Shown: positions 1 through 33,743, counted from the stretch's first letter. The stretch: DNA of 35,124 bases from Pelomyxa schiedti (GCA_020536535.1 JAHLWZ010000142.1:1-35124), one strand, 5' to 3'. A program made the numbers and translations. Notes: generated by a model from the letters alone, not told the origin.

Positions 1-610
1 GTCATCAAGTTGGGTTCTTTCTTCAGAAGAAAAATTGCTCCCTCAGTCAAAAAGCGGAGTTGTTCAAGAGTCGGAGCGGGAGGGAGATCACTCTCTTGCA
101 CAGCGCACGTGCGACTGTTCGTCTCACCAGAGGCAGGCATCCCATAATTTGGTGACATAAGCCGAGAGTGCTGAGCAAGTATCGACCTGGCAGTGCCCCT
201 GGCTTTCCTCAGTGGCCCCCTCATGTTTTCCAGGAATCTCTCCCTCCACGTAGCCGCCCCCCCATGCTCCCCTCCCTCTGTAGTAGAAGCAGCGCATTGA
301 ATAAACCAACCACACCAAGCACACAAGCAAACACACCTCGAGGGAACCAAGAGACATCGCCCCCGGTGGCCACAAACAGCGGCCTCCACACCACCGTGTC
401 CACGTCCGTGGCGCCGTGCCGAGAGGCCAAGTTCGCCGCATCCTCGTCGTGCTGTGGCCCAGGGGGCCGCCCGCCGGGGCTCCCCCCCCCTCGTGTGGCT
501 CGCCACAGGCAGGGCCACGCCACGAGCATGCGCCAGCTGCTCACGCCGTCGTCGATTGCAGCGAGCTCCACGCACAACCTCACAACTACCTCCAACGGCA
601 GTAGCTCCAT
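1..610 (-). CDS. F-box-like + PPP-family (PP2A/PP4/PP6-like) phosphatase, copy A; 5' part only, continues off the left edge
   Basis: ATG at 610: [31 protein letters not shown] (F-box-like). Intron 278-336 (GT-AG) joins in frame to [10 protein letters not shown]...[11 protein letters not shown]. Near-identical to 21903-22514 (copy C), which continues into GDIHG. Confidence 0.8.
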
Positions 611-1577
611 GCTCAGCTTCTTTACCGTTGAAGTTCGAGGAAAAAAGAACTGGGTGGTTCGAATAGATTAACCAACACCGGAACGCTGTAAATCACGTAG
701 TCTCGGCGGTCTGGTGTTTCTTTTATTCGGCCAATTGCCTAGCTGTGACAAGGGTATTCTGGAGATGTGAAGTTGGTGGTGGGGTTGCCAACTTTGAAGC
801 GGTTGATGTAGCAGCAGTGCCCAGCAGAACTTCTGCTTATAGTGATTCTGCTCATGTTGGCGGTTGTGCCTCCACTTCTCAATTTGCGTTTCTTCATCGC
901 CCTTTGTGACTCCAACTCTGGCTCCCCTGTACTGTGCCACCAGTGTCACTGTCGCCAGTGCTTCCTTTCCTCCTTAAATACTGGAACATGTTGGCTTGGA
1001 TTTATTCCCCTGTGACAGGTATGTGTTAGCCTTCACAGTTACAAGTTACACTAAAAAATTGGTACTCACGAAGGTGTGCATTAGCAATATTCTCACCACT
1101 CCTCCTAGTGTGTCATACAACAAATGGAAACCTATTGATGTTGAAAACATCTTCCAGGTTTTTTTTTCCATCTTTTTGTTTCTTTTTTTTCCGCAGCTGC
1201 AGCTTGGAACCATCAACAACAAGGCCAAGCTCCTTCCAATTCCCTCAATGCACTCTCTCTGCTATCATCCCCAGTGGAGATGTGTCCAGCTTGTGCACTA
1301 TGGGTCACACCTTACCTGAGGATATACTCCACATTCCAGTAAAGGAATCTTTCGTCCAATGCCTCTGCTGCATTTTGCAATTGTTACAACAATGAGCTCA
1401 TTCGTGAATAGAATTTTTTTTCATTTGGGAATGGGTTGGTGTGCACGACTCTGTGTGGTCTCCCTTCCTTGTGGGCCTGCGATCTCGTCACAACTCGAGG
1501 ACCAGACACCACTATTTGGGCCAGCTAAATCCAAAAGAACAGATTTTTCCCATCCATCAAAAGGAGATTTTTTTTCT

Positions 1578-2210
1578 CTAGAGATAGTATTCTGTCTGTT
1601 GGTGCGGATGTGGATACGAAGGCAAGTTTGACCAGGTGAATTCCCTCATGAGGATTGTGCCATCTGCCACAATCCTCACATTAGGCACTGCTGTAGTACT
1701 GTTGCCGCAGGGGGCTGTGTGTTCCTCCATCACCACGGTGGCTCCTTGGTTGCCACAGTGGTAGCCGTAACTGCTGCGGCTGTCTATCGTGCACACAAGG
1801 TTGTCCAATTCCCAGGATATTCCATTCATCACCAGCTGGTGGCTTCTGACAATGAACTGCAGGTTGTTTCTGCTGAGGAACGACTTGCATGCACGGCGCC
1901 CATAGAGACCTGCACCCAATAAGCATTAACCAAGAATATGATAATTAACGCTGTAACCCCAAAAATGTTGAGGTTTTACATACACCCCGCTCCTCGAGGG
2001 GATGCAGACCAGTCTTCAGTGTGAGTGTCAGGGTCTGACCATAGGAAGTCGGTAATCTATCAGTGCAAATACTCATGTTACTTGAAATCAAAAAAAAACA
2101 ACGTTTACAATGCCTGCGTCAACTGGTGCTGAGTCAACGAATCTATCAAGTTTCAGGATATCACTTATCTCAGGCAGCTCTAACTTGTGTTTAGTTGAAG
2201 CGGTTCAATT
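1578..2210 (-). CDS. PPP-family phosphatase, copy B; 3' part only, truncated by the assembly gap
   Basis: Spliced reading LDRFVDS..GI|[16 protein letters not shown]|[46 protein letters not shown]. It matches PP2A-type DLLWSDP, SPRGAG, RAHQLVMEG and YRCGNQAA. Paralogous to 20628-21292. Confidence 0.8.
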
Positions 2211-2310
2211 NNNNNNNNNNNNNNNNNNNNNNNNNNNNNNNNNNNNNNNNNNNNNNNNNNNNNNNNNNNNNNNNNNNNNNNNNNNNNNNNNNNNNNNNNN
2301 NNNNNNNNNN
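2211..2310. other. Scaffold gap (100 N)
   Basis: Exactly 100 N, which is typical of an unsized gap. Confidence 0.99.
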
Positions 2311-16482: not shown

Positions 16483-16698
16483 CACCGTTTTTTTTTAAAA
16501 TAAAAATACTCGTAGTACTGGGAAAATGCCTTGTTTCAGATGTCAATGTGCCAAGCCGTATACAACCCTGATTCCAACGACGACCTCGGAGCAGGGAACT
16601 ACCGCCAAAGTTCTGGGACGAAACAATAGATGGTGATGACATTTCCATCGCAACCATATTTCCCCAAAAACCCTAGAAAAGCCGGCGGGTGTGGAGGG
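16483..16698. promoter_or_regulatory. Putative short bidirectional promoter
   Basis: About 215 bp (about 150 bp if ATG 16630 is used) between the divergent starts of the phosphodiesterase and F-box-like genes. Confidence 0.5.
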
Positions 16699-17931
16699 AT
16701 GCTGTGCGATCTACCCAACGAGGTGTTGTGCTGCATAATAGACCACTGTAGACCTAGATGGTGGAGATCTAACTTGATTCCCAAACTACCTGTGGGCGAC
16801 AGTGACGCCCAACACTCACCTTCGACAATCCCCGAGATCGAATCAGCAGCGAAACAGACGTATTCGGTTGTTACAGTTTGCAAGGCTACCTCTCTGGCCG
16901 ACGACGAGCGGAGACAAACGTACGGGAGTATGCTGGCGGGCGGGCCTCCCACGATCGCCGGGGGAGACCCAGAAGCTGTTTTGTGCTGCGGAGGAATTTT
17001 CCGTGACGATTGGCCGTTTGCCTCCGTGGAAAGCCTCGGGATGACGTGCCGAAGAATGGCCACACTTCTAGCTGAATGTGATGCTAGGTTGTTCAAGCAT
17101 ACTGCCACTGTCTTGTTCGGGCTGGATGAAAATAAGGTTCCCTTTATGCTCCTTTTGTTTGTGAGTCATTGAGGATTGCAGCCTGGATTTATAACGTGGC
17201 TGGAGGCATGCCGACAATGTTGGATGAGGAGTATTGCTGATAACTACCGTACTGTATCTGTAGTGTTACACCACGATGTGACACTGGAAAACCCTGTTGT
17301 ATATTCCTGGATGCTAGTCATTGAAGTTGCCAAAAATGTTAGTTTCTTCTTTCCTGCTGTTTTAAAGTCTTACACATATACTCAGAGCGGAAATATGAGT
17401 GGCGGTGCTTTGTACCCAGAGCAACGAGATCTCAACAGAGATTATGGTGCAGCTCTCCAGGCAGACCTGAACTATGGGAGTGTTTTGCCATACTACCCAA
17501 AGGTTAACGTCACATGGAAGCCCATTGACAGTCACAGCGAACTATTTGACATGAGATTCACACCTTTTTTCGACACCTCCACAAGCAACAAGCACCGATG
17601 TGTGAGGTGGAGGTTGGATGGGCTGTTTTCCAATCCAACAGAGGACAGATATGGAGAAGTGCATGCAGTGGCTTTAGGCAAACCGCACACTTTAGCACAG
17701 TCACCTGATGATGCTTATCAATTTTTCAATGATACTCATCTCTTCTGGCAACCTCTCATTCCCATTGGAACCGTTTGTGCAATTAAAGTAGAGGTTAGTC
17801 CAAAACTCGAAAACAAGTTCTTATGTATTCATATTCAGTTTGATGACTGGGTTATGATCAAGGGGCAAGACCCTGAGGAGGATCATGTCTTGTCCAGGTG
17901 GGTACCCAAGCTGGCCTTGGATAAAATATGA
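16699..17931 (+). CDS. F-box-like protein with unknown C-terminal domain
   Basis: MLCDLPNEVLCCIIDH (F-box start) and, further on, SLGMTCRRMATL. Introns 17137-17181 and probably 17338-17385 (in frame). An upstream in-frame ATG exists at 16630. Confidence 0.7.
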
Positions 17932-18008: not shown

Positions 18009-20488
18009 TCAGCCAGAAACGATATTGTACACAATAGCAGCCAAACAGACTCCACAAAACAATATGCCAGAAACAACCAGCAGAACCGACAGAATTCTGG
18101 TGGCATTCCACCCAGGACCAGACAGCCGGCTGTAACACAAACCTGGCATCACGTAGCATATTATGGTGCTTGCCGTTCCGCCTGTAATTCCCAAAACCTT
18201 GTTGGTTCTTGTTGTTATTCGGAAATTTTGCTATGGAACGAAGAAAAACAAAACGAGTTCAAAAAAAAAATAGAGCGAACCTTGTCAAGGTCATCGACAA
18301 AGAAGGCAATGATGAAGCTAGCAATAACAAGTAAAAGTGTCTCACAAGCATGCCTTAGCAAAGGCCTCCATTCGGGCCAGCGGGCAAATGCTAGGGAGTC
18401 AAGTCTTCCGGTTTGTTTATTGACATTAATATATTTCGATATATTTGGGAGTAATACGATGCCCTGGCAGGGTGCAGAAGCACAGGGTAACTGAATATTA
18501 CTAAAATTGCCTGCAGCACGCGTGCTATGATGACAGATATAGCATCGGCAGGCACTATGGGTGTCAGGGCAAACTTTCATCCAGGAAACAAAGGCATACA
18601 GGCACTCAGAATATTTGGTTGAATCTCGGTTCCGCTACTAATATAGCCACAAATTCCTAGCCCTTGATAGCATACAAAAGCAATAGCACATGAAATCCAT
18701 ACAACAACCTTTGAGATAAATTAATTTTAATTTGATCCAGTAATGGGTCATTTACTCTCATATTCCGGTTTCTGTTGTGTTTTTTCATTTCATTCCATAC
18801 TCCAAAGAACTGTAAGAAGATTGGCTATGAATGAACAAAGGAGCACAATAGTACATTAGGATGGCAGCAGTATGCAAACACCACAATTGGAATTGCACCT
18901 AAAGTTTCCCTTTCGTGGGTGTCACAATTCATTGAACCAGTGTCAGCACATACGTTGTGAGTGAAAACCATACAATATTTCCGTCAAGTTTTGGCTTCCA
19001 GATAGCAAAAACAGTAACAAGGGAAAAAATATAAAATGCACAAACAAGAGCAAAGAGGCTTGAAAGGAGTAAGTAGCGATTCACATGAGGTAAATGTGCC
19101 AACCTGGTGTAGCGAAGTGAATCCAATTTTTTTGGAAAACTGAGTGCGCCAAGTACGAGCAGAACAACAGGAAGAACAATTTGTTTGCTTACAACTTGCT
19201 CAGTTGAAGGAAAAATTGCTATGATGATATCGGGAATCAATTGACCCAGAACGAGCATATATGCTGTGATGATCCCAAAGCAGCAGCCAATGATTGAGGC
19301 ATCCACTATAATATTCCCCCATGCAATTGACTGTTAAGATGGTGTTTCAAGTTGGGTACATACTCCTATTGTTGTATGGGTGTGTTTGTAGATTTGCGTA
19401 GTTTTTTTTTCTTTTCGGTGGAGCGATTTAGTACCCGTTTAGCAACAGTTTGATAGGTGATCATCTGGGTATGAAGAGTATTCCCATCGCTATGTTCCAC
19501 GAGAGGTGACTTCACTTCTAGTATCGTGCAGCAGGAGTGCAAAAGCTCCAGAGAAAAAACGGAAATGGCACCAAAGAGTAAGATTAGACTGTGTAATACA
19601 GGATTGAGATAAAAGAAAAGGGATCCAATAGGCAACTGCACTACCATGGACCAAGTATCAAGCCTGCCTTCGCCACGGCCCAGCCAAGCCCCAACATTCC
19701 TAAGAATCCAGTCAGTTGTCATTTCAAAAAAAAAAAAAAAAAACGAATTACAGTCACACAGATTTAAAAAAAAAAAAGATACATAACAACAAATAAGGAA
19801 AGAAACGAACAAAGTATGAAAACATGAACAGGAACAAACCGCAGCCCAAGAGAGTATTCGATATGTTTGATATCCCGGATATTACCGATGCGCCCTTTTT
19901 GTCATCGCCATCACCGGCGCCCTCAATCTCGACCTCTCCTTCATCGTTGCCCTGCCTTGACTCTTTCCCATCACCTTCTCCATCGTGATTCACATTTGTT
20001 ATGCGTGGTGACAAAGACGAGGACGATTGCAGCGTCTCGTCGCCAGGATCGAACGAGTTTTGGTCTGACGACGTGATCACGATGGCGCCGGCGCAGCGAC
20101 CGTGCCCCCCGTCCAGTCCCATAAGTGTCTCTGGTGCCGCTTGTGCTTGGGTGGCAGTCGCCGAAGTGATCGTCGACATCTTCACCGCCGCGGCGCCGGT
20201 CCGCGAAAAAGGAGACGAGTCGGGGGCCGCGGTGCCCTTGATCAGCGGAATCGCGGCGTTGCGCCCAAGGTACTCCCCGTCGTCGCCCGGGGTCTGTGAT
20301 CCGCGATTGTGGGAGCCGCCGCCGCCGCCGCCGCCACGGCGAGAGTGCGATGAGTACGACGACGGAGACGAAGAGGGCGAGGAGTCGTACGACGCGCGAC
20401 GCGGCCGGTGGGTAACCACGATGGAACCAAAGTCCAACGACGATCTACTGCTGGTGTGAAAGGAGGTAGGTTCAACGTCGTCTGCCAT
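18009..20488 (-). CDS. Amino-acid transporter, Aa_trans (AVT/SLC38-like) family, with a long Ser/Gly-rich N-tail
   Basis: ASVISGISNISNTLLGCG, CFGIITAYMLVLGQLIP, LSFPKKLDSLRYT, FVDDLDKV, GITGGTASTIICYVMPGLCY; multiple TM exons. Confidence 0.9.
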
Positions 20489-20627: not shown

Positions 20628-22514
20628 TTAGAGATCGTCTTCACGGTGTTGTTGTGGATATGGATACGAAGGCAATTTTGACCAGGTGAATTCCCTCATG
20701 AGGATTGTGCCGTCTGCCACAATCTTCACATCAGGCACTGTTGTAGTACTCGCAGCAGCACTTCCACTGCTGTTGCCTCCGGGTGTGCTTCCCACTGCTG
20801 TGCACTCCTCCATAACCACGGCGGCTCCTTGGTTGCCGCAGCGGTAGCCGTAGTTGCAGCAGCTGTATATCGTGCACACAAGGTTGTCCAGTTCCCAGAA
20901 TATTCCATCCATCACCAGCTGGTGGCTTCTGACGATGAACTGCAGGTTGTTTCTGCTGAGGAACGACTTGCATGCACGGCGCCCATATAGGACTGCACAC
21001 AAATAGGCAAGTAAGTTGATAACTCGAGACTGAAAGCCCCCAAAAATGTTGAGGTTTTACATACACCCCGCTCCTCGAGGGGATGCAGACCAATCTTCAG
21101 TGCGAGTGTCAGGGTCTGACCATAGGAAGTCGGTAATCTTTATATTGCGGTACCCATGTTACTTGAAATAAAAAAAAAAACAACGTTTACAATGCCTGCG
21201 TCAACTGGTGCTGAGTCAACGAATCTATCAAGTTTCAGGATATCACTTATCTCAGGCAGCTCTAACTTGTGTTTAGTTGAAGCGGTTCAATTTGGGTCAA
21301 TCAACCTTGACTTGGACCACCATGAACAGCAAATACTTTGTTACCTATGGTGGCAGCCTTGCTCTTTGAGTTCTTTTTTCAACTTTCATTTGGTGTGCAT
21401 ACCAATGGAAGACAGTCAAAAACGTCACACAGCCATTCCCAGGATGCCAGTTCTTTATATGCGACTCTGCAATTCTCATACAAACCGTAAACCCGCGTCA
21501 TCTGCCTGCTTTCGTGGTTCCCTCTTTGATTTTGTTTGTTTGGATAAACGCAAATGTAGTGAGGGACTTTTCACCTGAGCAAAGTGACTGAAGAAGGGAA
21601 AAGGAGTTTCAATGCCAGCAAAAGGCTGATGCACTGGAGAGAGTGATGCCTGTCGAAAGGGCTGAGAACACACAGGGTTACTTAAAATTGGCAGAATACC
21701 CCAAATCCACATAATCACCCAAGAAAAGGAAAGAACGGTGCTGAGGAGATCCCAAGAGCTTGAAAACAGTGTGCAAGTCTTCCAGCTGCCCGTGGATATC
21801 TCCCACAATCGCAATCTTTTTGAGATCGGAGAACACTCACATCAGCCCCAAGGTGCCGATTGGAAAATTAAAGTTGGGAATAACCGCACGGGAAACTGCA
21901 GGGTCATCAAGTTGGGTTCTTTCTTCAGAAGAAAAATTGCTCCCTCAGTCAAAAAGCGGAGTTGTTCAAGAGTCGGAGCGGGAGGGAGATCACTCTCTTG
22001 CACAGCGCACGTGCGACTGTTCGCCTCACCAGAGGCAGGCATCCCATAATTTGGTGACATAAGCCGAGAGTGCTGAGCAAGTATCGACCTGGCAGTGCCC
22101 CTGGCTTTCCTCAGTGGCCCCCTCATGTTTTCCAGAAATCTCTCCCTCCACGTAGTCGCCCCACCCTCCCCTGGAGGCAGTGCATTGAATAAACCAACCC
22201 CCTCATCTAACAATAAAGCGCCACCACGCACAGTGACACACAAGCAAACAAGTAAACACACCTCGCGGAAACCACGATCTCTCACCCCCGGTGGCCACAA
22301 ACAGCGGCCTCCACACCACCGTGTCCACGTCCGTGGCGCCGTGCCGAGGAGTCCCTTCCTCCACCTGGTGCTGTGGCCCAGGGGGCGTCCCCCCTCGTGT
22401 GGCTCGCCACAGGCAGGGCCACGCCACGAGCATGCGCCAGCTGCTCACGCCGTCGTCGGTTGCGGCGAGCTCCACGCACAACCTCACAACTACCTCCAAC
22501 GGCAGTAGCTCCAT
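20628..22514 (-). CDS. F-box-like + PP2A/PP4/PP6-family phosphatase, copy C (complete, about 8 exons)
   Basis: F-box-like N-terminus, then FP|[19 protein letters not shown]|[17 protein letters not shown]|[67 protein letters not shown], ending HREDDL*. All junctions are GT-AG and in frame; the first intron has two possible in-frame acceptors. Confidence 0.88.
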
Positions 22515-24097: not shown

Positions 24098-26873
24098 TCA
24101 ATGTGATTCCGAGGGTGTTGCGGAATCTATCTGTGGCACAGAACCACAGGAAATGCCAGTGCACTCAATGATTCCTGACATGGTGGCTAAGTTGCTTGGA
24201 ACTTCGAATTTGACACCACACAACAGCTCGGAGAAATGAATGGCGGTTTTGAGATGCTCACTTGATATGCTGGTCTTGTAAGGGCAGAGGATTCTCGACG
24301 TGCCGCGAGCCAGTGCCATGAATATAACCAACTGGTCCATTGTGTATTCACAGACACAGCCTCCGGCATTGTAGATTTCCACAAGTCGTTTTACAGCTTT
24401 TTCAGCAACCTAGTTGAGGGTAAAAAGTTAGTTGAACTCTGGTGTATTTTTTATGGGTCTCACTTCTTGTGGGGATATCTCCGTTTTGCTTTCAAATAGA
24501 CTGTCAGCGGCAATTAGGCAGCCGGTTGATGTTTCCAGTACAAGTTGCACACCAGCAACTCCACTGGTTTTTTTCCTGGCTTCTTCATTCAGGGCTCTTC
24601 TTTCCTTGAAGGTCAGTCCACCGGTTTCCTCTGCAGAACCGGGAGTTTCAGTTCGGACTTGCTTAGCCTTATTTTTCCTGGCCTGCTTTGCTGCGGTATC
24701 GTCCTCAGCACTTCCGTCATCTTCGGGTGCAGGTATGATTGTAATGTCTTCTATACCAAAGCGGTCATGAATCATTGCCCTCACAATTGAAATCACGGAG
24801 CGCGGTAGGCGTGTTCGGCATGTGCCACCGCCGTAGGCTACACCTCTGACAGATATCGGAACTCCGCGGTCGGTTATGGTTGCAGCTGAGATGCCCCCAA
24901 TAACTGGTGTGATACACACTTCAACTTCACCTTTTCCCCATGGGTAGAAGCCACGCTTGTGAATATTCAGCTTCAAATTTTGCTCAGGTACTCCAAAAAA
25001 TCTGTGCAACAAAGGGAATAGTACCATCCTGAATTGCCAGTGAACATCTTTATGGTGGATGTAGGTGTTACCTGATATAATCGATTGGGGGGCTCCCCAC
25101 AACATTTGTACCGCCTCGCAAAGTCATAGTTACAGGCTGTTCATGTGCACCAAGCAAAGCACAAGGCAATGCTGCCTGTAGAAGAAGGGTTATTGCCCCA
25201 GCTGTGTGTGTATCTGGGAAAAAGTGGGTAGTGTGGTGTGATGAAGAGGTTAGCACCTGCATGAAAGGCTCCTCCGCGCAGTCCTTTCACACCTGGCCAT
25301 AAAAATAACTCTCCTGCACCTTCACAGTGCCCACCATACTAACAAATAATAGGCACTACAAATTAAAAAGGTTTTGTCATGCAAACCTGTATGGGTTCTG
25401 GTCGCACCAGCCCGTCACATAGGTCAGTGACTAATTTAGCCCCGGTGGAGTGCTGATGTCCCAGTCCTGGCTTTGGCCTACCTGCTCGTATGGAATGAAT
25501 GTGCAATGGTCGCCCTAGTAGTGCACCAAATGCAAGAGCCACACGGAGTACTTGTCCTCCCCCCTAAGTGAGTAAGATGTTTAAAAAACTTCACGCAGGA
25601 AAGTCAAGGTACCTCAAGAATGGATCCATCTACAAGAGGCAGTGGCGGTACACCAGAGCTCACAACATCTCTCTCTGAGGCAGAAGTGCTTGTTGTGACT
25701 GACGTGGTTGCTGACGTGGTTTCACGTACAGGCTCAATCACAGGAATAAATGACTGCAATATTGTAGCTTTTGGACCAGTGTGCTTCATGGAAACAAAGG
25801 GAAACACAGGGCCTCTAAGCACCCCTCTCCAACTGATGACACTTGTCCCGTTCAAGAAAAACTGCAAGTCACCACTCCCAAGATCAACAGACACACCAAT
25901 GATGTCCCCATCAGAATACTGGGGTTGATTTCTCATTTTCTCACCATGTACACGAAGAGTCCCTGGTCTGTTTGACTGTACACTGCCACCAGACCTACAG
26001 GAGGAATAGGTAAGAGCATCCACAAATGGAATCAATTTACCAAATGATACATTTGGTGTTATGCTTAGGGGATTCATCCACCCAAACGTCGGAATATGCC
26101 ACCTACAAATTGAAACCTACTGTGAGCGTGAAAGAAGAACAACAAGAAAATGGGTACCCCAATCCAATAAGCATCATCAATTGGATCTGATGCCCTTACA
26201 ACAAAAGTATGGATACCAGTACTGAACAGTTCCAACCCAACAACACCTATAAAGATAAATTCTTAGTATGTTCTATGTTTATTCCTCTGTACATAAAAAA
26301 AAAAAAAAAAAAAAGGAACAATAACAAACAGGTTTAGAATAAAAAAATAAACCAACCTCCCCAATCATCAGTTGTCTGAGAGACTGTCATTTTATCAGCC
26401 GAAAAAGCCATAGAGCGAGTGGCCTGCGCGTCATTCCACCCAATGTCACTACTCCGTCCCATAAACGCAGCAGAGCCCTTGCTCCCACCAAGCACCTTCT
26501 CGGCCGCCCCAGCCACAAACGGGCTCATCTCGCCACACGTCGACGTAGCGGTAGAGCTAGAGGCCGACGCGGCGGAGGCGGTACTCTTGGTTGAGCCTGT
26601 GGAGCGAGCTGCCGCGGTCGCACTTATGGGTGTCTGCTGGGACTTCCCCCGCCCCCTGGCGCTCGCCGCCTGGGTTGTTGCTCCCCCGCGTGCAGTTGCA
26701 TTTGCACTTGCATTTGCATTGGCATTTGCCCTGCCTCGCCCACGGTCACCACCTCCACCGCCTCGTTGATTGTTGTTATGAGGCTGCGGTTGTGTGTGCT
26801 GCTGTTGGGCGGCTGATTGCAGTATCCGAGTGAGGTCTGTTATAGACTTATCTGTGGTGTTGGTAGCCGACAT
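24098..26873 (-). CDS. RTCA: RNA 3'-terminal phosphate cyclase fused to an N-terminal RG/low-complexity region and a SPRY domain
   Basis: SPRY: FSADKMTV, FSTGIHTF, YSDGDIIGVSVDLGSGDLQFFLNG, GPVFPFVSM. The same exon runs into VDGSILE|GGGQVLR, then IRAGRPKPGLGHQH, TAGAITLLLQAALP, GGTNVVGSPPIDY, RGFYPWGKGEV, EYTMDQL and SEHLKTAIH (adenylated His equivalent present). Confidence 0.9.
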
Positions 26874-26956
26874 GAGACTGGCCTCTCGAAAACAAAAAAA
26901 AAAAGTTTTTGTTTGTTCATGAAATTTTTTCGGCAAACAAAAACGGGGTGTTGTTT

Positions 26957-29620
26957 TCAGTAGTCGGAAGGGTCAGCTTTGAGAAGAGAATCCAGTGCCT
27001 GTGAGGCCGACATTCTTTGATCACATGATGGTAGCAGCATGGCTCTCAGTGTTCTTTCCATTGCACCCCCGGAGAGTTCCGGCCTCAGTGGGGGGAGTTT
27101 GTCAGGATTAAATGTGGATTGTGAGGTGTTGGTGAGCGCCTGTGGGTCGGCACACATAAGCTGCCAGAAAACGAGCGCAATTGCAAATGAGTCCGCGTTC
27201 TTGTATGGAACCTTCACTATGTTGCTGTTGCTGCGCAGTCCTCTGTTGGCTGAAAGTGTGAGTGCGGCTATATTTGGGGGGTAGGTGAAGCTGTTTCCCC
27301 ATGGGCTGTCTCGGTTCAGGTCAATTGGGTATGTCATTTGCTCATTGAACTTGGTAACTATGGCCAATCCAAAGTCAATAACATAGATACGGTGGCCCTG
27401 AGAGGTTGATTTTATGAGCAAGTTGTCACCCTTTACCAAGTTCTGTGAGTTTCCTTTTGAGAAGCAGTTCTACTAACTTTTATGTCACGATGCACTGTGA
27501 AGTTATTTGCCAAATGGCAGGTGGCAGAGAGGGCTTGTTGCAGCAATAAAAGCACATCCTTTTTTGATGAAACTACAGTGCTGAATACTTTGTCAAACGG
27601 TACACCTAGCAAGCCGGGGTTAGGAATAATAATGATTACTGCAGCTGCCTACCACCGTGTGGCATCATAATCATCACTGATCGCTGTATTGACCACTCAG
27701 CATAAACAGGGTATCCTGTTGATCCAAGTTATTTTGGGATTGCAGGGTTAAGGAAGCAAATACTGGCAGCAATTTGTTGCACCCAGGAATCGGGAAGGGT
27801 TGCAAAAAACGTGCAAATGGGATGCAGAATGTTTGGATGAGAGGGAAGAATGGACAGACACTGTACTTCATTTCGGTAACTGAGGAAAAGTTCCTTATTT
27901 AATTTAGATAAAGCAGCTTGGGAACCTGTTTCTGAGTAGTGTTGGGGAGGGATTTATAGTAGCATTAACATCCATCATGAACTTGAGACAGAGTGGAATT
28001 TGTATTCTTGGGTGTCGGGCAAAGAACACAGCACCAAATGAGCCACAGGACAATAAACTCGGATCGATGAAATCATTTACATCCAATAGGAGGCAAGAGC
28101 GAGAAATAGACTCTAATTCCTCCTTTTCGCTTCTATATGGTTATGAGACCCAAAATCAAAGTTGGATGCAAAGCCTTAAAATTGCATTTTCTGCTTTTAA
28201 CACAGAGGATTGCTGCTCAAGATCGAGACATCTATTCCTAAGAAAGGAATTTTGGTTGTGCAGAGAGTAATAAAAAGGTACTGGTAGGATGCTATTTCGT
28301 TTTTCATCTCGGTTTTCGTGTAAGTACAAGCAATTTGAAATATGTGTCAAATACTGCCGGAATGTTTAGTCTCATCTCTGGCCTTTCTGGTGGATAGGCA
28401 TCATGGCGGATAACAATAAACCTGGGTTCTCCCTCATTAACCTTTTGGTCCTCCAGGCACTCAATCCCCTCTATCTAACAACCATAATTTAAAAAAAGAT
28501 AAACTCATGACTATACAGTTAAAATTGCTAATGCTTCTGGATCCACTCCAATTCTCCGTGATACTAAAGTACGAATGTCCTGGCAGCGTGTATTCTCAGG
28601 AAGGCGATATTTGAACAGTTTTCCTTCGTGCCCAACCTCGATAACGAGAAGCTTTGTTGGTATGGGAGGGGGATGAACACTCAGATAGATCTCCGTATTG
28701 CATACAACCGAATGCAATATCTGCAGTGCCAGCATTTCGGTTTCAGGGTTTTGAATATGGTTATCGATGGAGAAAATTCTCTCCGAGCGATAAGTGGATT
28801 CAAGGAAACTCCTCAGGTGCTCTTGCCTCTCTTTGGGGACAGTGTCAATGTGCGTTATCACCACTGTCGATCTAATTCCGTGATGTAAGGTCCACTCCAC
28901 CATCCGCTGAACAAAGAAACGAGGGTTCATTTCTGATCGGGGATCAGATGCAGAAATAACCCAAATCATTGAAGGTGCACGAGCAGAACAGTCTCCAAGC
29001 ATGTCAGATGTGTCCTTTCTCAGGTGAGACACAAGTGTTAAGAGTGTTTGTCATACTGTATCATTGTTGTGGCTTTGATTAGGTGATGATCCGCGAAGAA
29101 AGGAGCCGGACTTCACGGCTCCTGACAATATCTCTTGGGCTCTCTTTACTTCCTCTGAAGAATCCGCAAAGAAACCGGGAGAATCCACAAGAGTAATAGA
29201 GGGAGTGACAGAAATATCCTCAAGGAGAAAGGTGCCTTGGGACCCACAATCGTACTCGGTTGCAATCGGCAACTTACCTATTTTGGGTCCTTGGTGTCAC
29301 TTCGCGCCAAACAAATGCCAAAGCACAAAAAATCCGGGGATATTACCCATCGCTCTCAGTATCGTGTTTATCACCGACGAAATGCCGGAACCGCAGCGGC
29401 CCATAAGTGGTATACGAACGCAACTAATTCTCTGCGAGTGGCCGTGCTGCACGTACAACTGCGTCGCGGGCGTCCATGTCAAAAGCTGGTGCCTCAGTGT
29501 GGCTGCATCACCAGTCCCAACTGTGGGTACCCTGCTATTTGGTGACCCACCTGTGGCGCTCCCACAAGTTGCTGTGCTTCCATTGGTTTCAGCTACGTGA
29601 CTGTTACCAGTAACGTCCAT
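26957..29620 (-). CDS. Multidomain protein: IFI44-like P-loop domain, ubiquitin-like domain, coiled coil, PINK1-like Ser/Thr kinase
   Basis: IFI44-like: VRIPLMGRCGSGISSVINT, LVDSPG, EILSG, GIRSTVVITHID, EMLALQIL. Beta-grasp: GKLFKYRLPENTRCQDIRTLVSRRIGVDPE. Coiled coil: CLDLEQQSSVLKAENAILR. Kinase: CGSFGAV, LCLK, HPNI, HRDIK|GDN, DFG, WGNSFTYPPN, PYKNADSFA, LPPL, QRMSA. Exons join in frame through short introns. Confidence 0.78.
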
Positions 29621-29716
29621 GAACGAATGGCGAAAAAAAAAAAAAAAAAAAAAACAAAGGGCCCTTCGACGAAACCCCTTTTTGATCGATGTCCCAAGTA
29701 AATCTAATCCCCGAGA
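29621..29716. promoter_or_regulatory. Putative 96-bp bidirectional promoter with poly(dA) tract
   Basis: Lies between divergent ATGs at 29620 (-) and 29717 (+); contains a run of about 22 A. Confidence 0.55.
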
Positions 29717-31158
29717 ATGAGCAGCGAAGCCCCCGCTGTCGCCAACACGCCGAGTCCGTCGACGCATTCCAGCAACAACACTGCGTCGTCGGAACAGCAC
29801 GCTCAAGCTCCGACGATGGCGGCGACGAGCGCGGTACTCGATCCGTCGTCGTCCGCAACGCCCACGACCAACACAACCGCCGCTACTAGTACGAGTGCTG
29901 CTAGTAGCGGGGCCGTCGGGGCCAAAGCCAAGGCCAAGGCGAAGGCCAAAGCTAAAGCCAAAGCTAAATCCAAGGCAAAGGGGAATAAAAAGGGGGGAAA
30001 GACAGCGAATACGCCACCAGGACAACAAGAACAACCAATCACGCCGCCTACTATTACTAGTACTAATACTTCAACGACGGCGGCCGTGGTTGAGAAACCT
30101 ATGTCGGCAGCAAGAGCAAAGAAAGAAGCCAGAAGAAAAGTATGGGTTTTTTTCCCCCCTTCCCCCGGGTTTTTTTCCTTAATTAATGCTCATTGCATAG
30201 AAAATTCAAGAAGAAAACGAGCGAGAGGCCTTCGTGCGCCAATTAAACTCGGTTCCAAACTTTTTCGAGAAATTCCATGCATTCAAGACTTACAAATCCA
30301 ACGGGTTTGAAACGATGCCACGTTGTGGCTACAACAACAGTTGGTGAATGACCCCTTCTCCCGCCCAGGCTTGACTTGGAGCTGGAATACATTCATTCCG
30401 GTGATATAACAAAAGAACTGCAGAAATGGGTGTTCAGTCTACTCGAAGATAACATGAAGAATTAGTAAGTGCATCCGTGTCTGCCTTTGAGTCACTTTAA
30501 CATACTGCAGTTATGAGGGTTCCTGGGGTTGGAATCCAACCCAGACTCGCAGTGAAATGACAAACACCAACACTCGCTACATTGTAAGGTTTTATTCTCT
30601 TCATTGTAGTTTCACTACATCCCAAAAAAGATTTGTCGTGAGAGGGTGTCAAGGCAACCCGTTGCCTTTTCATATTTCACGTTTGAAACGGAAGATATGC
30701 CTGTTGGTTGCAGTCTTTATCTGTGCGAGTTCAGACTTTTCTTTTTTTTTTTTAGTGTCCATCCTTCCAAACCACCAACTCCTCTAGGTATGAGTTACAG
30801 CTGCACCCTTCTGTCAGAGGGAAAGGTCTAGGAACATTCCTTATGCAGGTTTTAAATTGTTAATTTTCCACAAAAATAAATCAACTGCAGATTACTGAAT
30901 TAATTGCTCGGTCAAGCAAAGTTGATTGCATTCGGCTGACATGTTTCACTGGTATTCTTACCTCCAACACCACAGGAAGTGCCAATTTGACACCCTATTT
31001 AAGATAATTCTGAGGCTGTTCAGTTCTATGAAAAGCACGGCTTTGTTCTCGATCCGCTCACACCCAAAGTAACATTTGAGGACGCTCTGTCTTCGACATA
31101 CAGAATCATGTGCAAATCCTACTCCCCCAACGGCCTCCTACGAAAAGGTCTCCTGTGA
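29717..31158 (+). CDS. NAA40: N-alpha-acetyltransferase 40 (NatD; histone H4/H2A N-terminal acetyltransferase), GNAT fold
   Basis: Spliced reading FKTYKSNG|LDLELE..KWVFSLLEDNMKNY|YEGSWGW..SEMTNTNTRYIV, PVAFSYFTFE, YELQLHPSVRGKGLGTFLMQ, LTCF, NSEAVQFY, YRIMCK. Confidence 0.88.
29921..29980 (+). repeat. Degenerate coding hexamer repeat (GCC AAG)n encoding AKAKAKAKAKAKAKAKSKAK
   Basis: Directly visible; synonymous variation between units. Confidence 0.9.
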
Positions 31159-31419
31159 ACCCTAGTTAAATGATGAATCTGAGAAAAACCATTTTCTTTT
31201 CCTTTGGGGGTGCCATCTTTGGCTCCGTTCAATTGAATTTGGCTCAAAACCCGGGCCCAGGCTCACCCACCGTCACCCAACGACGGCATTCAATGAATTT
31301 GTTGAGAAGTAGCCATACGTGAAATCGCCGGGGTTGTCACTCAGATACGGCGAGCCCTTCGCATGCAGCAGTGTCAGACACTCCCTGCCTTCACAGAAAA
31401 ATCTTTTGTTCGGAACACC

Positions 31420-33743
31420 ATGCCGAAAGGCAAAAGACCGCGGCAGCCCAATGGGGCGGGGACGCCCTCAGGGGAACAAGCACAAGAGACGGCAGCCAAG
31501 ACCACGAGCAGCAGCGGGAAGGGCAAGAAGGCCTCGGGGCTCACCAGCGCCCTCTCCAGCCTCTTCACCCGCTCGCAGACCCACTACGCCGCCACCTCCT
31601 ACTCCCCCGGCGGCGGCCTGCTCCCCGTCCTCGTCTACGGCTCCCCCGAGACCTGCCCCCAGTCCACCATGCACACCGTGCGCTGCCCCGAGTCCGCCTG
31701 CCCCGCCGCCAGGTTCTGGGCCAGCGAGGCGGAGCTCCAGCAGGCCCGCCGCGAGGCCCAGGCCAACAAGAAAAAGGCCGCCGCTGCTGCTGCTGCGGAC
31801 GTGAGCGGGTGGAACTGCTTGTACACGCACACCAACTGGAAGACCATGGAGCTGGTGATAGTCAACTTTGTGCCCGAGGTTCCGAGGGTGGCTCTCGAGG
31901 GCGGGTGGTGGTTGACCGAGAGGGGTGTGTAAGTGTGCTTTTTCATTTTGATTTATGTTAGATGTTTGCCATTGTATGTTCGATTGGGTGGGGGAGGGGC
32001 GGTAGCTTTGGAGTTTCTAGTGTAATGATAATCGAATGTTAAATTTATATAATTTATTAGTTATATTGTGGCATTGTATTGCAAATGTATTTACAGTGGT
32101 GTGGTTTTTACAGCCAGAAGCATTGAAATGAGGAACGGGCATCCAAGGAAGATCGCACTGGGCAACTGTGACAAGAAGTTCACTGATGTCAGATGTGCTG
32201 TCATTATTTGTGATCCCTCTGGCACAAGTTGCACTCAGACTTCCGTGAATTTGAGTGAGAATTATTTGTTGCATTTCTCACCCTTACACTTCTATAGAGT
32301 TAGCTCCTATTTTCCCAAACAGCCCTCCCATTCACACTGCATCCCCACTGCCATCCTTATTCGAAGGTGTGTGTCCTGTACCACAAATCATCGAACAGCC
32401 CTTTGCGCTTCACTTGGACCAAAAGTTTGCCGATGAGCAGGCCGGAATAATCAACAGATGGTCTAATAATGCATGCAAAATAAGATCGCTGCCAGCCCTC
32501 TTTACGTGGAGCCAAGCCGTGCAAGTGTTTCAAGAGAACTTCAATGTAGACGTTTCAGCACTACAAGCCCAGGGTAATGATAATTTTACGTAACTTCGAC
32601 CTGACTTAGAAGGCACTCCAATTGAGTTTGCGGAACAAAGTCTCCCGATACAGAGATTGACCGTCTACGCTGGAATGCTTTTGCTCACCACATGTTAGTT
32701 GTAAATTCTCTTCAAAACCCCATTATCGAAGTTGACAAGGTAAGACAAACACTCTGACCCTCTCAAATTTCCAACACCCTTCTTAGTATTGCCTTGAATT
32801 TTGGCAGACAAGACAGTAACCCGATGATACCCAACTCCTCTCACACAATCAGGTGGTTCCATGGATTCATAACACGGCAAGAGGCCGAGCAAATATTGCA
32901 GTCATATGCCCTCCCATGTGCCCTATTACGATGTGGCCAAAGTGATCCTTGCCTCTTAACCTTGTCCCAAAAATTACCCACAGGTTTCTCCAGTCACAGA
33001 GATGTTAAAGGCAACCTCTCAGCTTGATATTAACATGAATAGGTATATATCACCAGAATATTGCGAAGACAGTTGGAGTGCAAGTAGTGCCCCAAATTCG
33101 ACAGCCGAGCCCAAACACCAATGCCCAGTACTCACCTTACTCTTGTTCTGTGTCATCATCCTCAGCATCACCATCCCCCTCACAGAACGGCACCCCACTC
33201 CTCCCAATATCACAACAAGAATACACAGTTCCCCAGCAGCAACACCCAGAGGCACTGATACCCTCCAACACGTACGGTCCATATGGGGTTTTGGGTACCA
33301 GCAATGATTCCTCACAATTGCTACAGCCACTCCCACTCTCCTATCAACCAGAATCCACCTCCACAAACACAACACAAGCATCACAACAATCAGCAACAGC
33401 AGCACCACCCCCACCGTGTACTGTACCACCTCCATCACAGAATAACAACACAAATAGACTGGGGCCAGTACCTCCCCCACCATTGCCAATCTACCTTCCG
33501 GGCGACAATGGCATGCCATCAGCGGCAGCAACAGCCACAGTCACAGCAACTGCCGCATTTATTGTATACAATGTGGTTGGGAGAGACCAACCACAGCAGC
33601 AGGTGTATGACACAACAATAGAGGGGGTGGTCTGCAGGCTGCTGAACAGGGCTCTTTTTGGAGAGGTCAGGCTGGTTGGCCGTGCCCTACACACCTTGAC
33701 TGAGGCTTGCCTCTTTGCCCACCACAACGCCTCCTTGTTGTGA
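31420..33743 (+). CDS. STAT-type linker-SH2 domain protein with Pro/Gln/Ser-rich C-terminal region
   Basis: Spliced reading TWSQAVQVFQENF..IDRLRWNAF..IIEVDK|YCLEFWQTRQ|WFHGFITRQEAEQIL..ALLRCGQSDPCLLTLS..|GIYHQ. Compare STAT [31 protein letters not shown]. Basic N-terminus MPKGKRPR is NLS-like. Confidence 0.75.

What the first reader, a model, noticed from the sequence alone, without database searches (positions are those of the whole stretch)
20628..22514. F-box-like domain fused to a PP2A-family catalytic domain lacking the phosphate-binding Arg; three copies in 22 kb
Seen: F-box-like N-terminus plus a full PPP domain with metal ligands intact (GDIHG, GDYVD, GNHE, HGG, RSHQ), but GDYVDRG reads GDYVDLG (TTG at 21702-21704). 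Paralogs lie at 1-610 and 1578-2210. Knowledge: this Arg (PP1 R96 / PP2A R89) binds substrate phosphate, and PP2A/4/6 catalytic subunits are normally stand-alone and extremely conserved. Inference: a weak or dead phosphatase repurposed as the substrate receptor of an SCF ligase, trapping phosphoproteins or PP2A regulators for ubiquitination. This may be an undescribed expanded family.
Basis: partly seen in the sequence, partly recalled or inferred. Interest (0 to 1): 0.8.

Follow-up and report, generated by a model that had tools for sequence, protein, structure and literature searches.

The report
F-box-like PP2A-type phosphatase gene family
The anaerobic amoeba Pelomyxa schiedti has a small, species-restricted family of very divergent PP2A-like phosphatases with a degenerate F-box-like N-terminus, and the window copy has Leu in place of one of the two phosphate-clamping arginines. 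This domain combination has apparently not been described, and Skp1 binding and loss of activity are both unproven.

Summary
Window 20628-22514 (minus strand) is a 9-exon gene of Pelomyxa schiedti. Seven of its eight introns are confirmed by spliced RNA contigs. It encodes a PP2A-like PPP domain with all metal and acid motifs intact but GDYVDLG instead of GDYVDRG. The TTG codon is present in DNA and RNA contigs.

The ~178-aa N-terminal extension starts with an LPxE…SW…LW motif.
- Pfam does not call it an F-box.
- It matches a profile of this genome's own F-boxes weakly (P 0.004).
- It is homologous (P 6e-6) to the N-termini of two more distant paralogs, which match that profile well (P 4e-6, probability 87%).

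The "three copies" are one complete gene plus two fragments, one cut by the contig end and one by a 100-N gap. Genome-wide there are at least 6 loci with this architecture.

The Arg loss is not a family trait. The position is Leu in A (and probably B), Lys in C792, and Arg in C831, C876, C941 and C241.

No relatives of the N-terminus were found in 1.84 billion protein representatives.

Skp1 binding is untested: the complex job gave no verdict. Splicing of intron 1, which is what fuses the F-box-like exon to the phosphatase in this copy, is inferred rather than seen.

First-stage readers of this scan flagged the same architecture on three other pieces of this genome.

Verdict: a new variant of a known kind, of moderate interest.

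The parts
20628..22514 (-). Gene A: 9-exon F-box-like / PP2A-like phosphatase gene. My model gives 468 aa. The public annotation P0006 is 369 aa and starts in exon 2.
22262..22514 (-). Exon 1. The ATG at 22514 is shared as the start by four copies. It encodes the F-box-like motif, a low-complexity insert and a conserved VWRPLF..GG..WFP block.
   Evidence: dN/dS of the N-terminal part is 0.28-0.38.
22401..22508 (-). F-box-like core (residues 3-38): an LPxE helix 1, then SW..L....LW.
   Evidence: hhalign vs own-genome F-box profile: P 0.0044-0.00077. No Pfam hit.
22171..22261 (-). Predicted intron 1 (91 nt, GT..AG, phase 1). It is needed to join exon 1 in frame to exon 2. It is not confirmed by RNA.
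   Evidence: the position is shared with copy B and C792, and the region is absent from intronless C831; it is spliced in the annotated C792 protein; it is retained in one B-type RNA contig.
21890..22170 (-). Exon 2: conserved [18 protein letters not shown] helix, linker, and the first helices of the PPP domain.
   Evidence: The joint 21815/21890 is seen in RNA.
21700..21815 (-). Exon 3: GDIHG and GDYVDLG.
   Evidence: Pfam Metallophos 3.9e-7. Joints on both sides are seen in RNA.
21702..21704 (-). Leu codon (TTG) at the position of PP1 Arg96 / PP2A Arg89.
21575..21649 (-). Exon 4.
   Evidence: joints 21649/21700 and 21523/21575.
21403..21523 (-). Exon 5: GNHE.
21306..21357 (-). Exon 6: VHGG.
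21191..21261 (-). Exon 7.
21065..21137 (-). Exon 8: LWSDP and SPRGAG. The second clamp Arg is kept.
20628..20992 (-). Exon 9: [15 protein letters not shown], a family-specific C-terminal region, and a tail ending ..EDDL instead of TPDYFL. Stop codon at 20628-20630.
1..610 (-). Copy B: exons 1-2 only. It runs off the end of contig C142.
   Evidence: 93% aa identity to A over 164 codons.
1578..2210 (-). Copy C: exons 7-9 only. Its 5' part is lost in the gap. It carries further changes in the SAPNY/YRCGN region.
2211..2310 (.). 100-N assembly gap that truncates copy C.

Best explanation
Gene A belongs to a Pelomyxa schiedti-specific family of long-branch PP2A-like (type-2A PPP) catalytic subunits. 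The family has at least 6 loci plus fragments. Instead of being stand-alone ~310-aa subunits with a TPDYFL tail, its members carry an N-terminal module, then a variable linker, then the catalytic domain. The module consists of an F-box or F-box-derived motif followed by a conserved WRE(R/K) helix.

Most likely mechanism (inferred): the N-terminal module tethers the phosphatase to Skp1-containing complexes, either SCF or non-SCF. This would replace the canonical targeting by A/B subunits and the methylated tail, and would place a phosphatase fold where F-box proteins normally carry their substrate-binding domain.

The ancestral enzyme was probably active: most members keep every catalytic residue. 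In the young tandem A/B lineage the motif-2 arginine of the '2-arginine clamp' is Leu. All metal ligands, the His proton donor and the second clamp Arg are kept. Gene A is therefore most likely a strongly attenuated, phosphate-binding-impaired paralog evolving under relaxed constraint, not the founding logic of the family.

Shown: gene structure, transcription, motifs, the Leu codon, the paralog census, purifying selection, and lack of relatives elsewhere.
Inferred: F-box function, Skp1 binding, reduced activity, and splicing of intron 1 in this copy.
For: Organism and annotation.

Gene structure and expression:
- Introns 2-8 are seen as GT..AG joints in RNA contigs.
- A spliced C792 transcript is also seen (X4 record 18 loose end).

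PPP identity:
- Metallophos hit.
- The best PDB match is PP2A C-alpha at 236 bits, against 205 for PP1.
- The YRCGN signature is present.

Fusion is real at family level:
- In C831 the N-terminal domain and the first PPP helices lie in one uninterrupted exon. That gene is annotated as the 496-aa protein P0001.
- The C792 protein P0003 is annotated with intron 1 spliced.

F-box evidence:
- C941+C876 N-termini vs a 16-sequence F-box profile from this genome: probability 87.5%, P 3.6e-6 over 44 columns, 0/150 column shuffles.
- A subfamily vs C941/C876: P 5.7e-6.
- A subfamily vs F-box profile: P 0.0044; all six together: P 0.00077.
- Weak PF12937 hit for C941, E 0.14, covering profile positions 4-42.
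- The language-model neighbours of the C831 N-terminus are F-box clusters.

Genome context: at least 148 F-box-like matches and 5 Skp1 loci.

Selection:
- dN/dS of the N-terminal part is 0.28-0.38 and of the catalytic part 0.12-0.21 against C831/C792.
- It is 0.73 and 0.49 against the recent copies B and C.
- The A branch is longer than the C792 branch.

Arg position: L / K / R across copies. Its role in the 2-arginine clamp is described in PMC8249667.
Against: - No Pfam F-box model reports the N-terminus of A, B, C792 or C831 even at E 10.
- The A subfamily lacks part of helix 2 and has an insert.
- ESMFold2 complex with Physarum Skp1: score 0.02, no verdict.
- AF2 of the N-terminus: pLDDT 57, with no fold match.
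- Intron 1 of this copy was not seen spliced. A B-type RNA contig retains it, another RNA contig ends at 22107 with a template-switch oligo, and the public model P0006 starts at the Met in exon 2.
- The RNA contigs carry the B-type base at 22024, so expression of A itself, as opposed to its near-identical neighbour B, is not separately proven.
- I did not test monophyly of all six catalytic domains on full-length sequences. It rests only on similarity ranking of two exons.
Confidence: 0.55

Rival explanations
1. The N-terminal module is not a working F-box. It is a lineage-specific helical extension, possibly an F-box relic, with another role such as autoinhibition, localisation or dimerisation. 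The proteins would then be ordinary but divergent PP2A-like enzymes.
For: - No Pfam F-box hit for the A subfamily.
- Helix 2 is shortened and a low-complexity insert lies within the motif.
- The complex test and the fold search were uninformative.
- The A exon 1 has no language-model neighbours.
Against: - Canonical-length paralogs match the F-box profile at P 3.6e-6 and are homologous to the A-type N-terminus.
- The LPxE...W...LW order is kept.
- The N-terminal part is under purifying selection.
Confidence: 0.27
2. One reading: the phosphatase fold is a catalytically weak or dead phosphoprotein trap that serves as the substrate receptor of an SCF ubiquitin ligase.
For: - The architecture copies that of F-box proteins: an F-box at the N-terminus and a binding domain at the C-terminus.
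- Motif 2 is altered in three lineages: Leu in A/B, Lys in C792, and Asp->Asn in C241.
- Human SCF-FBXO42 acts on PP2A/PP4 catalytic subunits in trans, so a link between SCF and type-2A phosphatases exists (PMC13233325, PMC13458699).
Against: - Three of the six loci (C831, C876, C941) keep an intact GDxVDRG motif, and the motifs recovered in the distant paralogs are canonical.
- Lys and a neutral residue at these positions occur in ApaH-like PPPs, which PMC2175518 treats as a class apart from its pseudophosphatases.
- Skp1 binding is not shown.
Confidence: 0.15
3. In gene A and copy B, exon 1 is not part of the phosphatase protein. It would be an upstream ORF or 5' leader, and the phosphatase would start at the Met in exon 2, as in the public annotation (369 aa).
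For: - P0006 starts at MRGPLRK.
- A B-type RNA contig is colinear with the genome through intron 1, which puts a stop after exon 1. Another RNA contig has its 5' end at 22107.
Against: - Intron 1 has GT..AG ends, a polypyrimidine tract and the right phase in A, B and C792.
- Coding conservation continues on both sides of it.
- C831 has the same sequence as one open exon.
- C792 is annotated as spliced.
- Single-cell random-primed RNA often holds unspliced molecules.
Confidence: 0.13
4. A, B and C are decaying tandem duplicates on the way to becoming pseudogenes, and the Leu is one symptom of this.
For: - dN/dS is 0.73 (A vs B) and 0.49 (A vs C).
- Copy C has further changes in the SAPNY/YRCGN region.
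- The A branch is about 1.8 times the length of the C792 branch.
Against: - All 9 exons of A are open, with intact splice sites.
- Transcripts are spliced.
- All metal ligands are kept.
- The recent-copy dN/dS values rest on few changes.
Confidence: 0.2

Closest known systems
PP2A catalytic subunit (PPP2CA; e.g. PDB 2IE4, 2NYL) and the PP4/PP6 sister enzymes
   Same: Same fold and the same catalytic motifs: GDxHG, GDxVDxG, GNHE, HGG, RG, RxHQ and YRCGN. PP2A is the best PDB sequence match.
   Different: - About 178 aa of N-terminal extension.
- Arg89 equivalent is Leu.
- No TPDYFL tail (A ends ..EDDL).
- Very long branch outside the sampled PP2A+PP4+PP6 group.
- About 45% identity only.
F-box proteins (Skp2, Fbxw7, etc.; Pfam PF00646 / PF12937)
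   Same: An N-terminal LPxE..L...W...LW motif is followed by a C-terminal domain that could bind targets. The distant paralogs C941 and C876 match an F-box profile.
   Different: - The C-terminal domain is a PPP phosphatase rather than WD40, LRR or Kelch.
- The A-subfamily motif is shortened and interrupted.
- Pfam thresholds are not met.
- Skp1 binding is untested.
PPP enzymes with fused N-terminal targeting domains: PP5 (TPR-PPP), PPKL/BSU1 (Kelch-PPP), PPEF/RdgC
   Same: The principle is the same: a PPP catalytic domain is directed by a domain fused in cis rather than by separate subunits. All three appear among the PDB hits.
   Different: The fused domain here is F-box-like and the catalytic domain is of the PP2A type. 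To my knowledge this combination has not been described. The literature searches found none.
PPP-type pseudophosphatases: Plasmodium PfPPP8 (PMC10317984) and kinetoplastid kPPPs (PMC2175518)
   Same: Lineage-specific long-branch PPPs with substitutions at catalytic motif positions.
   Different: Gene A loses only the clamp Arg and keeps all metal ligands. Its inactivity is not shown.
SCF-FBXO42 control of PP2A/PP4 catalytic subunits (PMC13233325, PMC12909836, PMC13458699)
   Same: These papers link F-box/SCF machinery with type-2A catalytic subunits.
   Different: There the F-box protein acts in trans and targets the phosphatase for ubiquitination. Here the F-box-like motif is on the same polypeptide.

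Membership tests
PPP phosphatases (Metallophos, PF00149) | Motifs GDxHG, GDxVDRG and GNHE, plus HGG, the RG loop and the RxHQ histidine | tested here: met
   All are present in exons 3, 5, 6, 8 and 9. The Pfam hit on exon 3 is 3.9e-7. The only deviation is Arg->Leu in motif 2.
PPP phosphatases (Metallophos, PF00149) | '2-arginine clamp' (PP1 Arg96 + Arg221) for phosphate binding (PMC8249667) | tested here: not met
   The first Arg is Leu (TTG at 21702-21704) and the second is kept (SPRGAG).
PP2A/PP4/PP6 (type-2A) catalytic subunits | Closest sequence similarity to PP2A-type enzymes, and a YRCGN signature after SAPNY | tested here: met
   PP2A C-alpha scores 236 bits against 205 for PP1. The sequence [11 protein letters not shown] is present.
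PP2A/PP4/PP6 (type-2A) catalytic subunits | Conserved C-terminal TPDYFL tail (methylated Leu, Tyr307) | tested here: not met
   The tails are ..HREDDL (A)..TEYYL (C)..HKYFI (C792) and ..EPDRH (C831).
PP2A/PP4/PP6 (type-2A) catalytic subunits | Nests inside the PP2A, PP4 or PP6 clade in a tree | tested here: inconclusive
   The three P. schiedti proteins form a 100%-supported long-branch clade outside the sampled PP2A+PP4+PP6 rows. The tree has no outgroup and is midpoint-rooted.
F-box domain (PF00646 / PF12937) | Match to the curated Pfam model at its threshold | tested here: not met
   No hit at E<=10 for A, B, C792 or C831. C941 gives only E 0.14. None of the four loci is among the 148 genome matches, although only 150 of 405 candidates were scored.
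F-box domain (PF00646 / PF12937) | Profile-profile similarity to bona fide F-boxes | tested here: inconclusive
   A subfamily: P 0.0044, probability 8%, 2/150 shuffles. Paralogs C941+C876: P 3.6e-6, probability 87.5%, 0/150 shuffles. A subfamily vs those paralogs: P 5.7e-6 over helix 1.
F-box domain (PF00646 / PF12937) | Three-helix fold | tested here: inconclusive
   AF2 predicts helices at 6-17, 22-38 and 43-50 of the C831 N-terminus, but mean pLDDT is 57. Foldseek finds nothing at E<=0.001.
F-box domain (PF00646 / PF12937) | Binds Skp1 | tested here: inconclusive
   Complex prediction with Physarum Skp1 (P0240), whose C-terminal half is nearly identical to the P. schiedti Skp1 exons, scored 0.02. 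The tool's verdict was 'no answer'.
Pseudophosphatase | Lacks catalytic activity | not testable with these tools
   Only one substrate-binding residue is changed, so an enzyme assay is needed.

The most novel reading that the evidence does not exclude
P. schiedti has invented a class of SCF substrate receptors in which a PP2A-type phosphatase fold reads phospho-Ser/Thr degrons. Active members would erase the degrons. Clamp- or metal-site variants (Leu in A/B, Lys in C792, Asn in C241) would hold them for ubiquitination. One polypeptide family would then couple dephosphorylation and ubiquitination decisions.
Probability: 0.12. Interest if true: 0.8.

Novelty: new variant of a known kind. Interest (0 to 1): 0.55.

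Why it matters
PP2A-type catalytic subunits are among the most conserved eukaryotic proteins and are normally directed by separate scaffold and regulatory subunits. A family that drops the regulatory tail and carries an F-box-type adaptor motif in cis would be a new way of targeting a type-2A phosphatase. It would also physically link phosphatase and Skp1/SCF machinery, a link that in humans has been reported only in trans (FBXO42). The natural Arg / Lys / Leu series at the clamp position within one family is a ready-made set for testing what that residue contributes. If the motif proves not to bind Skp1, this is simply a divergent, lineage-specific PP2A-like expansion with an N-terminal extension.

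Tried and rejected
- Complex prediction: complex prediction of A exon 1 (84 aa) with Physarum Skp1 scored 0.02, 'no answer'. The tool used ESMFold2 and ignored my alignments. This is not evidence either way.
- Fold of the N-terminus: AF2 of the C831 N-terminus (7-sequence alignment) gave pLDDT 56.8. Foldseek against PDB found nothing meaningful; the top row was PA28 at E 2.
- Pfam on every exon and on all four A-type N-termini gave no F-box.
- Language-model atlas on A exon 1 gave no usable hit. For the C831 N-terminus the nearest clusters were F-box-containing, at scores of 0.90-0.92. I treat that as a lead only.
- Relatives elsewhere: a profile search of 1.84 billion representatives with the N-terminal module found only the C831 protein itself plus one spurious repeat protein. 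The word-based search with P0001 found no longer PP2A relatives with an F-box. The long hits I inspected are fungal-type PP2As with low-complexity N-termini or tandem mis-predictions.
- Literature searches for F-box/PPP fusions found none. The P. schiedti genome paper and the Entamoeba phosphatome paper do not mention one.
- Native Skp1: the P. schiedti Skp1 genes are split over 4 exons, so I could not hand in a native Skp1 chain unaltered.
Exons were searched one by one by reference. Full-length work used the database proteins P0001, P0003 and P0006 by id. As a result, full-length phylogeny of the three distant paralogs was not done.

Full report
**What is at the coordinates.**
The window is contig C142:1-35124 of a 52.4-Mb, 5337-contig assembly. 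A paralog's protein is recorded as KAH3756162.1 of Pelomyxa schiedti. The genome paper gives exactly these assembly figures and about 7.4 introns per gene (PMC8887013).

On the minus strand between 22514 and 20628 I read a 9-exon gene. RNA contigs from single-cell RNA-seq runs of the same study show GT..AG joints at 21815/21890, 21649/21700, 21523/21575, 21357/21403, 21261/21306, 21137/21191 and 20992/21065. These are exactly my introns 2-8.

The encoded catalytic domain carries GDIHG, GDYVDLG, GNHE, VHGG, LWSDP, SPRGAG, RSHQ and [11 protein letters not shown]. Pfam Metallophos hits exon 3. Its best solved relative is PP2A C-alpha at 236 bits, against 205 for PP1.

Exons were searched by reference. 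For full-length work I used the database proteins that the searches returned:
- P0006: this gene as publicly annotated, 369 aa.
- P0003: the C792 paralog, 485 aa.
- P0001: the C831 paralog, 496 aa.

**The Leu.**
The codon at 21704-21702 is TTG. Neither the two DNA contig sets nor the two RNA contig sets show any other letter there. The paralogs use AGG, CGA and AGA (Arg) and AAA (Lys). Leu is therefore at least two substitutions away from any of these and is not a sequencing slip.

[quoted passage not shown] The second clamp Arg, all metal ligands and the proton-donor His are kept.

**The copies.**
Copy B at 610-1 has only exons 1-2, because the contig ends there. Copy C at 2177-1578 has only exons 7-9, because a 100-N gap at 2211-2310 cuts it. 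Their order on the strand shows they are parts of two different tandem copies. A 586-bp contig (C4540) holds another exon-9 fragment. This looks like a tandem array that the short-read assembly partly collapsed.

Genome-wide, the A-type N-terminus occurs four times: A, B, C792 and C831. Complete genes with identical exon structure lie on C792 and C831.

Three further PP2A-like genes (C876, C941, C241) are the next-closest matches to both exon 3 and exon 9. Upstream on the same strand they carry an ME(R)L(P)LE..R(V)C start, a WREKC helix and a long low-complexity linker. Whether each upstream exon belongs to the same transcript as the phosphatase exons was not checked.

At the clamp position the census is:
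- Leu in A, and by the RNA contig that links B-type exon 2 to exon 3, probably also in B.
- Lys in C792.
- Arg in C831, C876, C941 and C241.
- Arg in all ten other PPP genes found.

C241 instead has GDYVNRG. So the Arg loss is a recent event in one sub-lineage. The tree puts C831 (Arg) outside C792+A.

**Is the N-terminus fused to the phosphatase?**
In C831 the whole N-terminal module and the first PPP helices form one uninterrupted exon, annotated as such in P0001.

In A, B and C792 a short insertion relative to C831 sits after ..WFPR. It has GT..AG ends, a pyrimidine tract and phase 1. P0003 is annotated with it spliced out. In A it is 22261-22171 (91 nt), which gives a 468-aa protein.

I could not confirm this splice in A. 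One RNA contig, B-type by its differences, runs colinear with the genome through it while having introns 2-5 removed. Another ends at 22107 next to a SMART template-switch oligo. The public model for A starts at the Met in exon 2.

The N-terminal part is under purifying selection: dN/dS is 0.38 against C792 and 0.28 against C831. The catalytic part gives 0.21 and 0.12. I put the fused product in A at about 85%.

**Is it an F-box?**
Pfam says no for the A subfamily. It gives only E 0.14 for C941, though that match spans profile positions 4-42.

I built a profile from 16 clear F-boxes of this genome. The genome has at least 148 F-box-like matches and 5 Skp1 loci. The hhalign results are:

| Comparison | Result |
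|---|---|
| C941+C876 N-termini vs own-genome F-box profile | probability 87.5%, P 3.6e-6, 44 columns; 0/150 column shuffles |
| A-subfamily N-termini vs C941+C876 | P 5.7e-6 (helix 1); 0/100 shuffles |
| A-subfamily N-termini vs F-box profile | P 0.0044; 2/150 shuffles |
| All six N-termini together vs F-box profile | P 0.00077 |

The alignments indicate that the A subfamily kept LPxE-helix 1 and the SW..L....LW end. It lost about 4-8 residues of helix 2 and gained a variable Gly/Pro-rich insert before a second VWRPLF block.

A hmmsearch with the same own-genome profile puts each copy in the right register, but at weak per-sequence P values of 0.0008 to 0.25.

My reading is that the family's N-terminus derives from an F-box (about 70%). 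Whether the A-type version still binds Skp1 is open (about 40-50%). The complex job, the AF2 model and the fold search were uninformative.

**Distribution and novelty.**
A profile of the N-terminal module, searched exhaustively against 1.84 billion representatives, found only the C831 protein. The word search with P0001 found only P. schiedti proteins with full-length coverage. The long PP2A hits from other organisms that I inspected have no F-box.

Paper searches found no F-box/PPP fusion. They did show that human SCF-FBXO42 regulates PP2A and PP4 catalytic subunits in trans. Lineage-specific PPPs with altered catalytic motifs are known in Plasmodium and kinetoplastids. That same kinetoplastid paper notes that Lys at the Arg position and a neutral residue at the second Asp are typical of ApaH-like PPPs, which it treats as a class separate from the pseudophosphatases. 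The C792 and C241 variants therefore need not be dead.

The family lacks the TPDYFL tail. It sits on a very long branch outside the sampled PP2A/PP4/PP6 rows.

First-stage readers of this scan flagged 'F-box-like + PP2A-type phosphatase' on three other pieces of this genome. I take those to be the paralogs described here. They are not independent evidence.

**Verdict.**
This is a real, expressed, species-restricted family that combines an F-box-derived N-terminus with a divergent PP2A-like domain. The architecture, rather than the Leu, is the notable feature. The Leu marks a young, fast-evolving tandem sub-lineage that is probably attenuated. An SCF-receptor or phosphoprotein-trap role remains speculation.

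Noticed in passing
window 16630-17172 (+): An ORF beginning ..LCDLPNEVLCCIIDHC.. gives weak F-box and F-box-like_2 Pfam hits (E 0.08). It is probably another F-box gene 3.5 kb from gene A.
   Followed up: partly
G000 genome-wide: There are at least 148 matches to PF12937 (405 first-look candidates, 150 scored) and 5 Skp1 loci. P. schiedti therefore has a large F-box/Skp1 repertoire.
   Followed up: partly
L021 (G000:C241:32267-35377), minus strand: The paralog has GDYVNRG (the second, metal-binding Asp of motif 2 is Asn). A roughly 70-aa Thr/Ser/Ala-rich insert lies inside its F-box-like motif.
   Followed up: partly
L019 (G000:C876) and L020 (G000:C941), minus strand: These are PP2A-like genes with canonical-length F-box N-termini, a WREKC helix and very long Gln/Pro-rich (C876) or Pro/Ser/Thr-rich (C941) linkers before the catalytic domain. 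An earlier scan note mentions a C-terminal membrane anchor on one such gene. I did not check that.
   Followed up: partly
window 22107 and 22171-22261: One RNA contig ends at 22107 next to a SMART template-switch oligo sequence. Another retains intron 1 while having later introns removed. These may reflect an alternative 5' end or intron retention that yields a phosphatase without the F-box-like exon.
   Followed up: no
window 20628-22126 vs 22262-22514: The public gene model (P0006, 369 aa) omits exon 1, whereas the models of the C792 and C831 paralogs include the N-terminal module. This is probably an annotation gap.
   Followed up: yes
window 1-2310 and contig C4540: The contig end, a 100-N gap and a 586-bp orphan contig all fall inside copies of this gene. 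This is the signature of a collapsed tandem array.
   Followed up: partly
window 20692: T>C difference in exon 9. It is seen in part of the DNA contigs of X1, in the contig of X2 and in RNA contig X3. It is an allelic or paralog variant.
   Followed up: no
window 19754-20488 (-): A 244-aa ATG-started ORF immediately downstream of gene A. It is Ser-rich with a Gly run and a hydrophobic C-terminus. I did not examine it.
   Followed up: no
window 24098-33743: Other first-reader notes on this window describe SPRY+RNA 3'-phosphate cyclase, an IFI44-like NTPase/kinase, and a STAT-like protein. I did not examine these.
   Followed up: no
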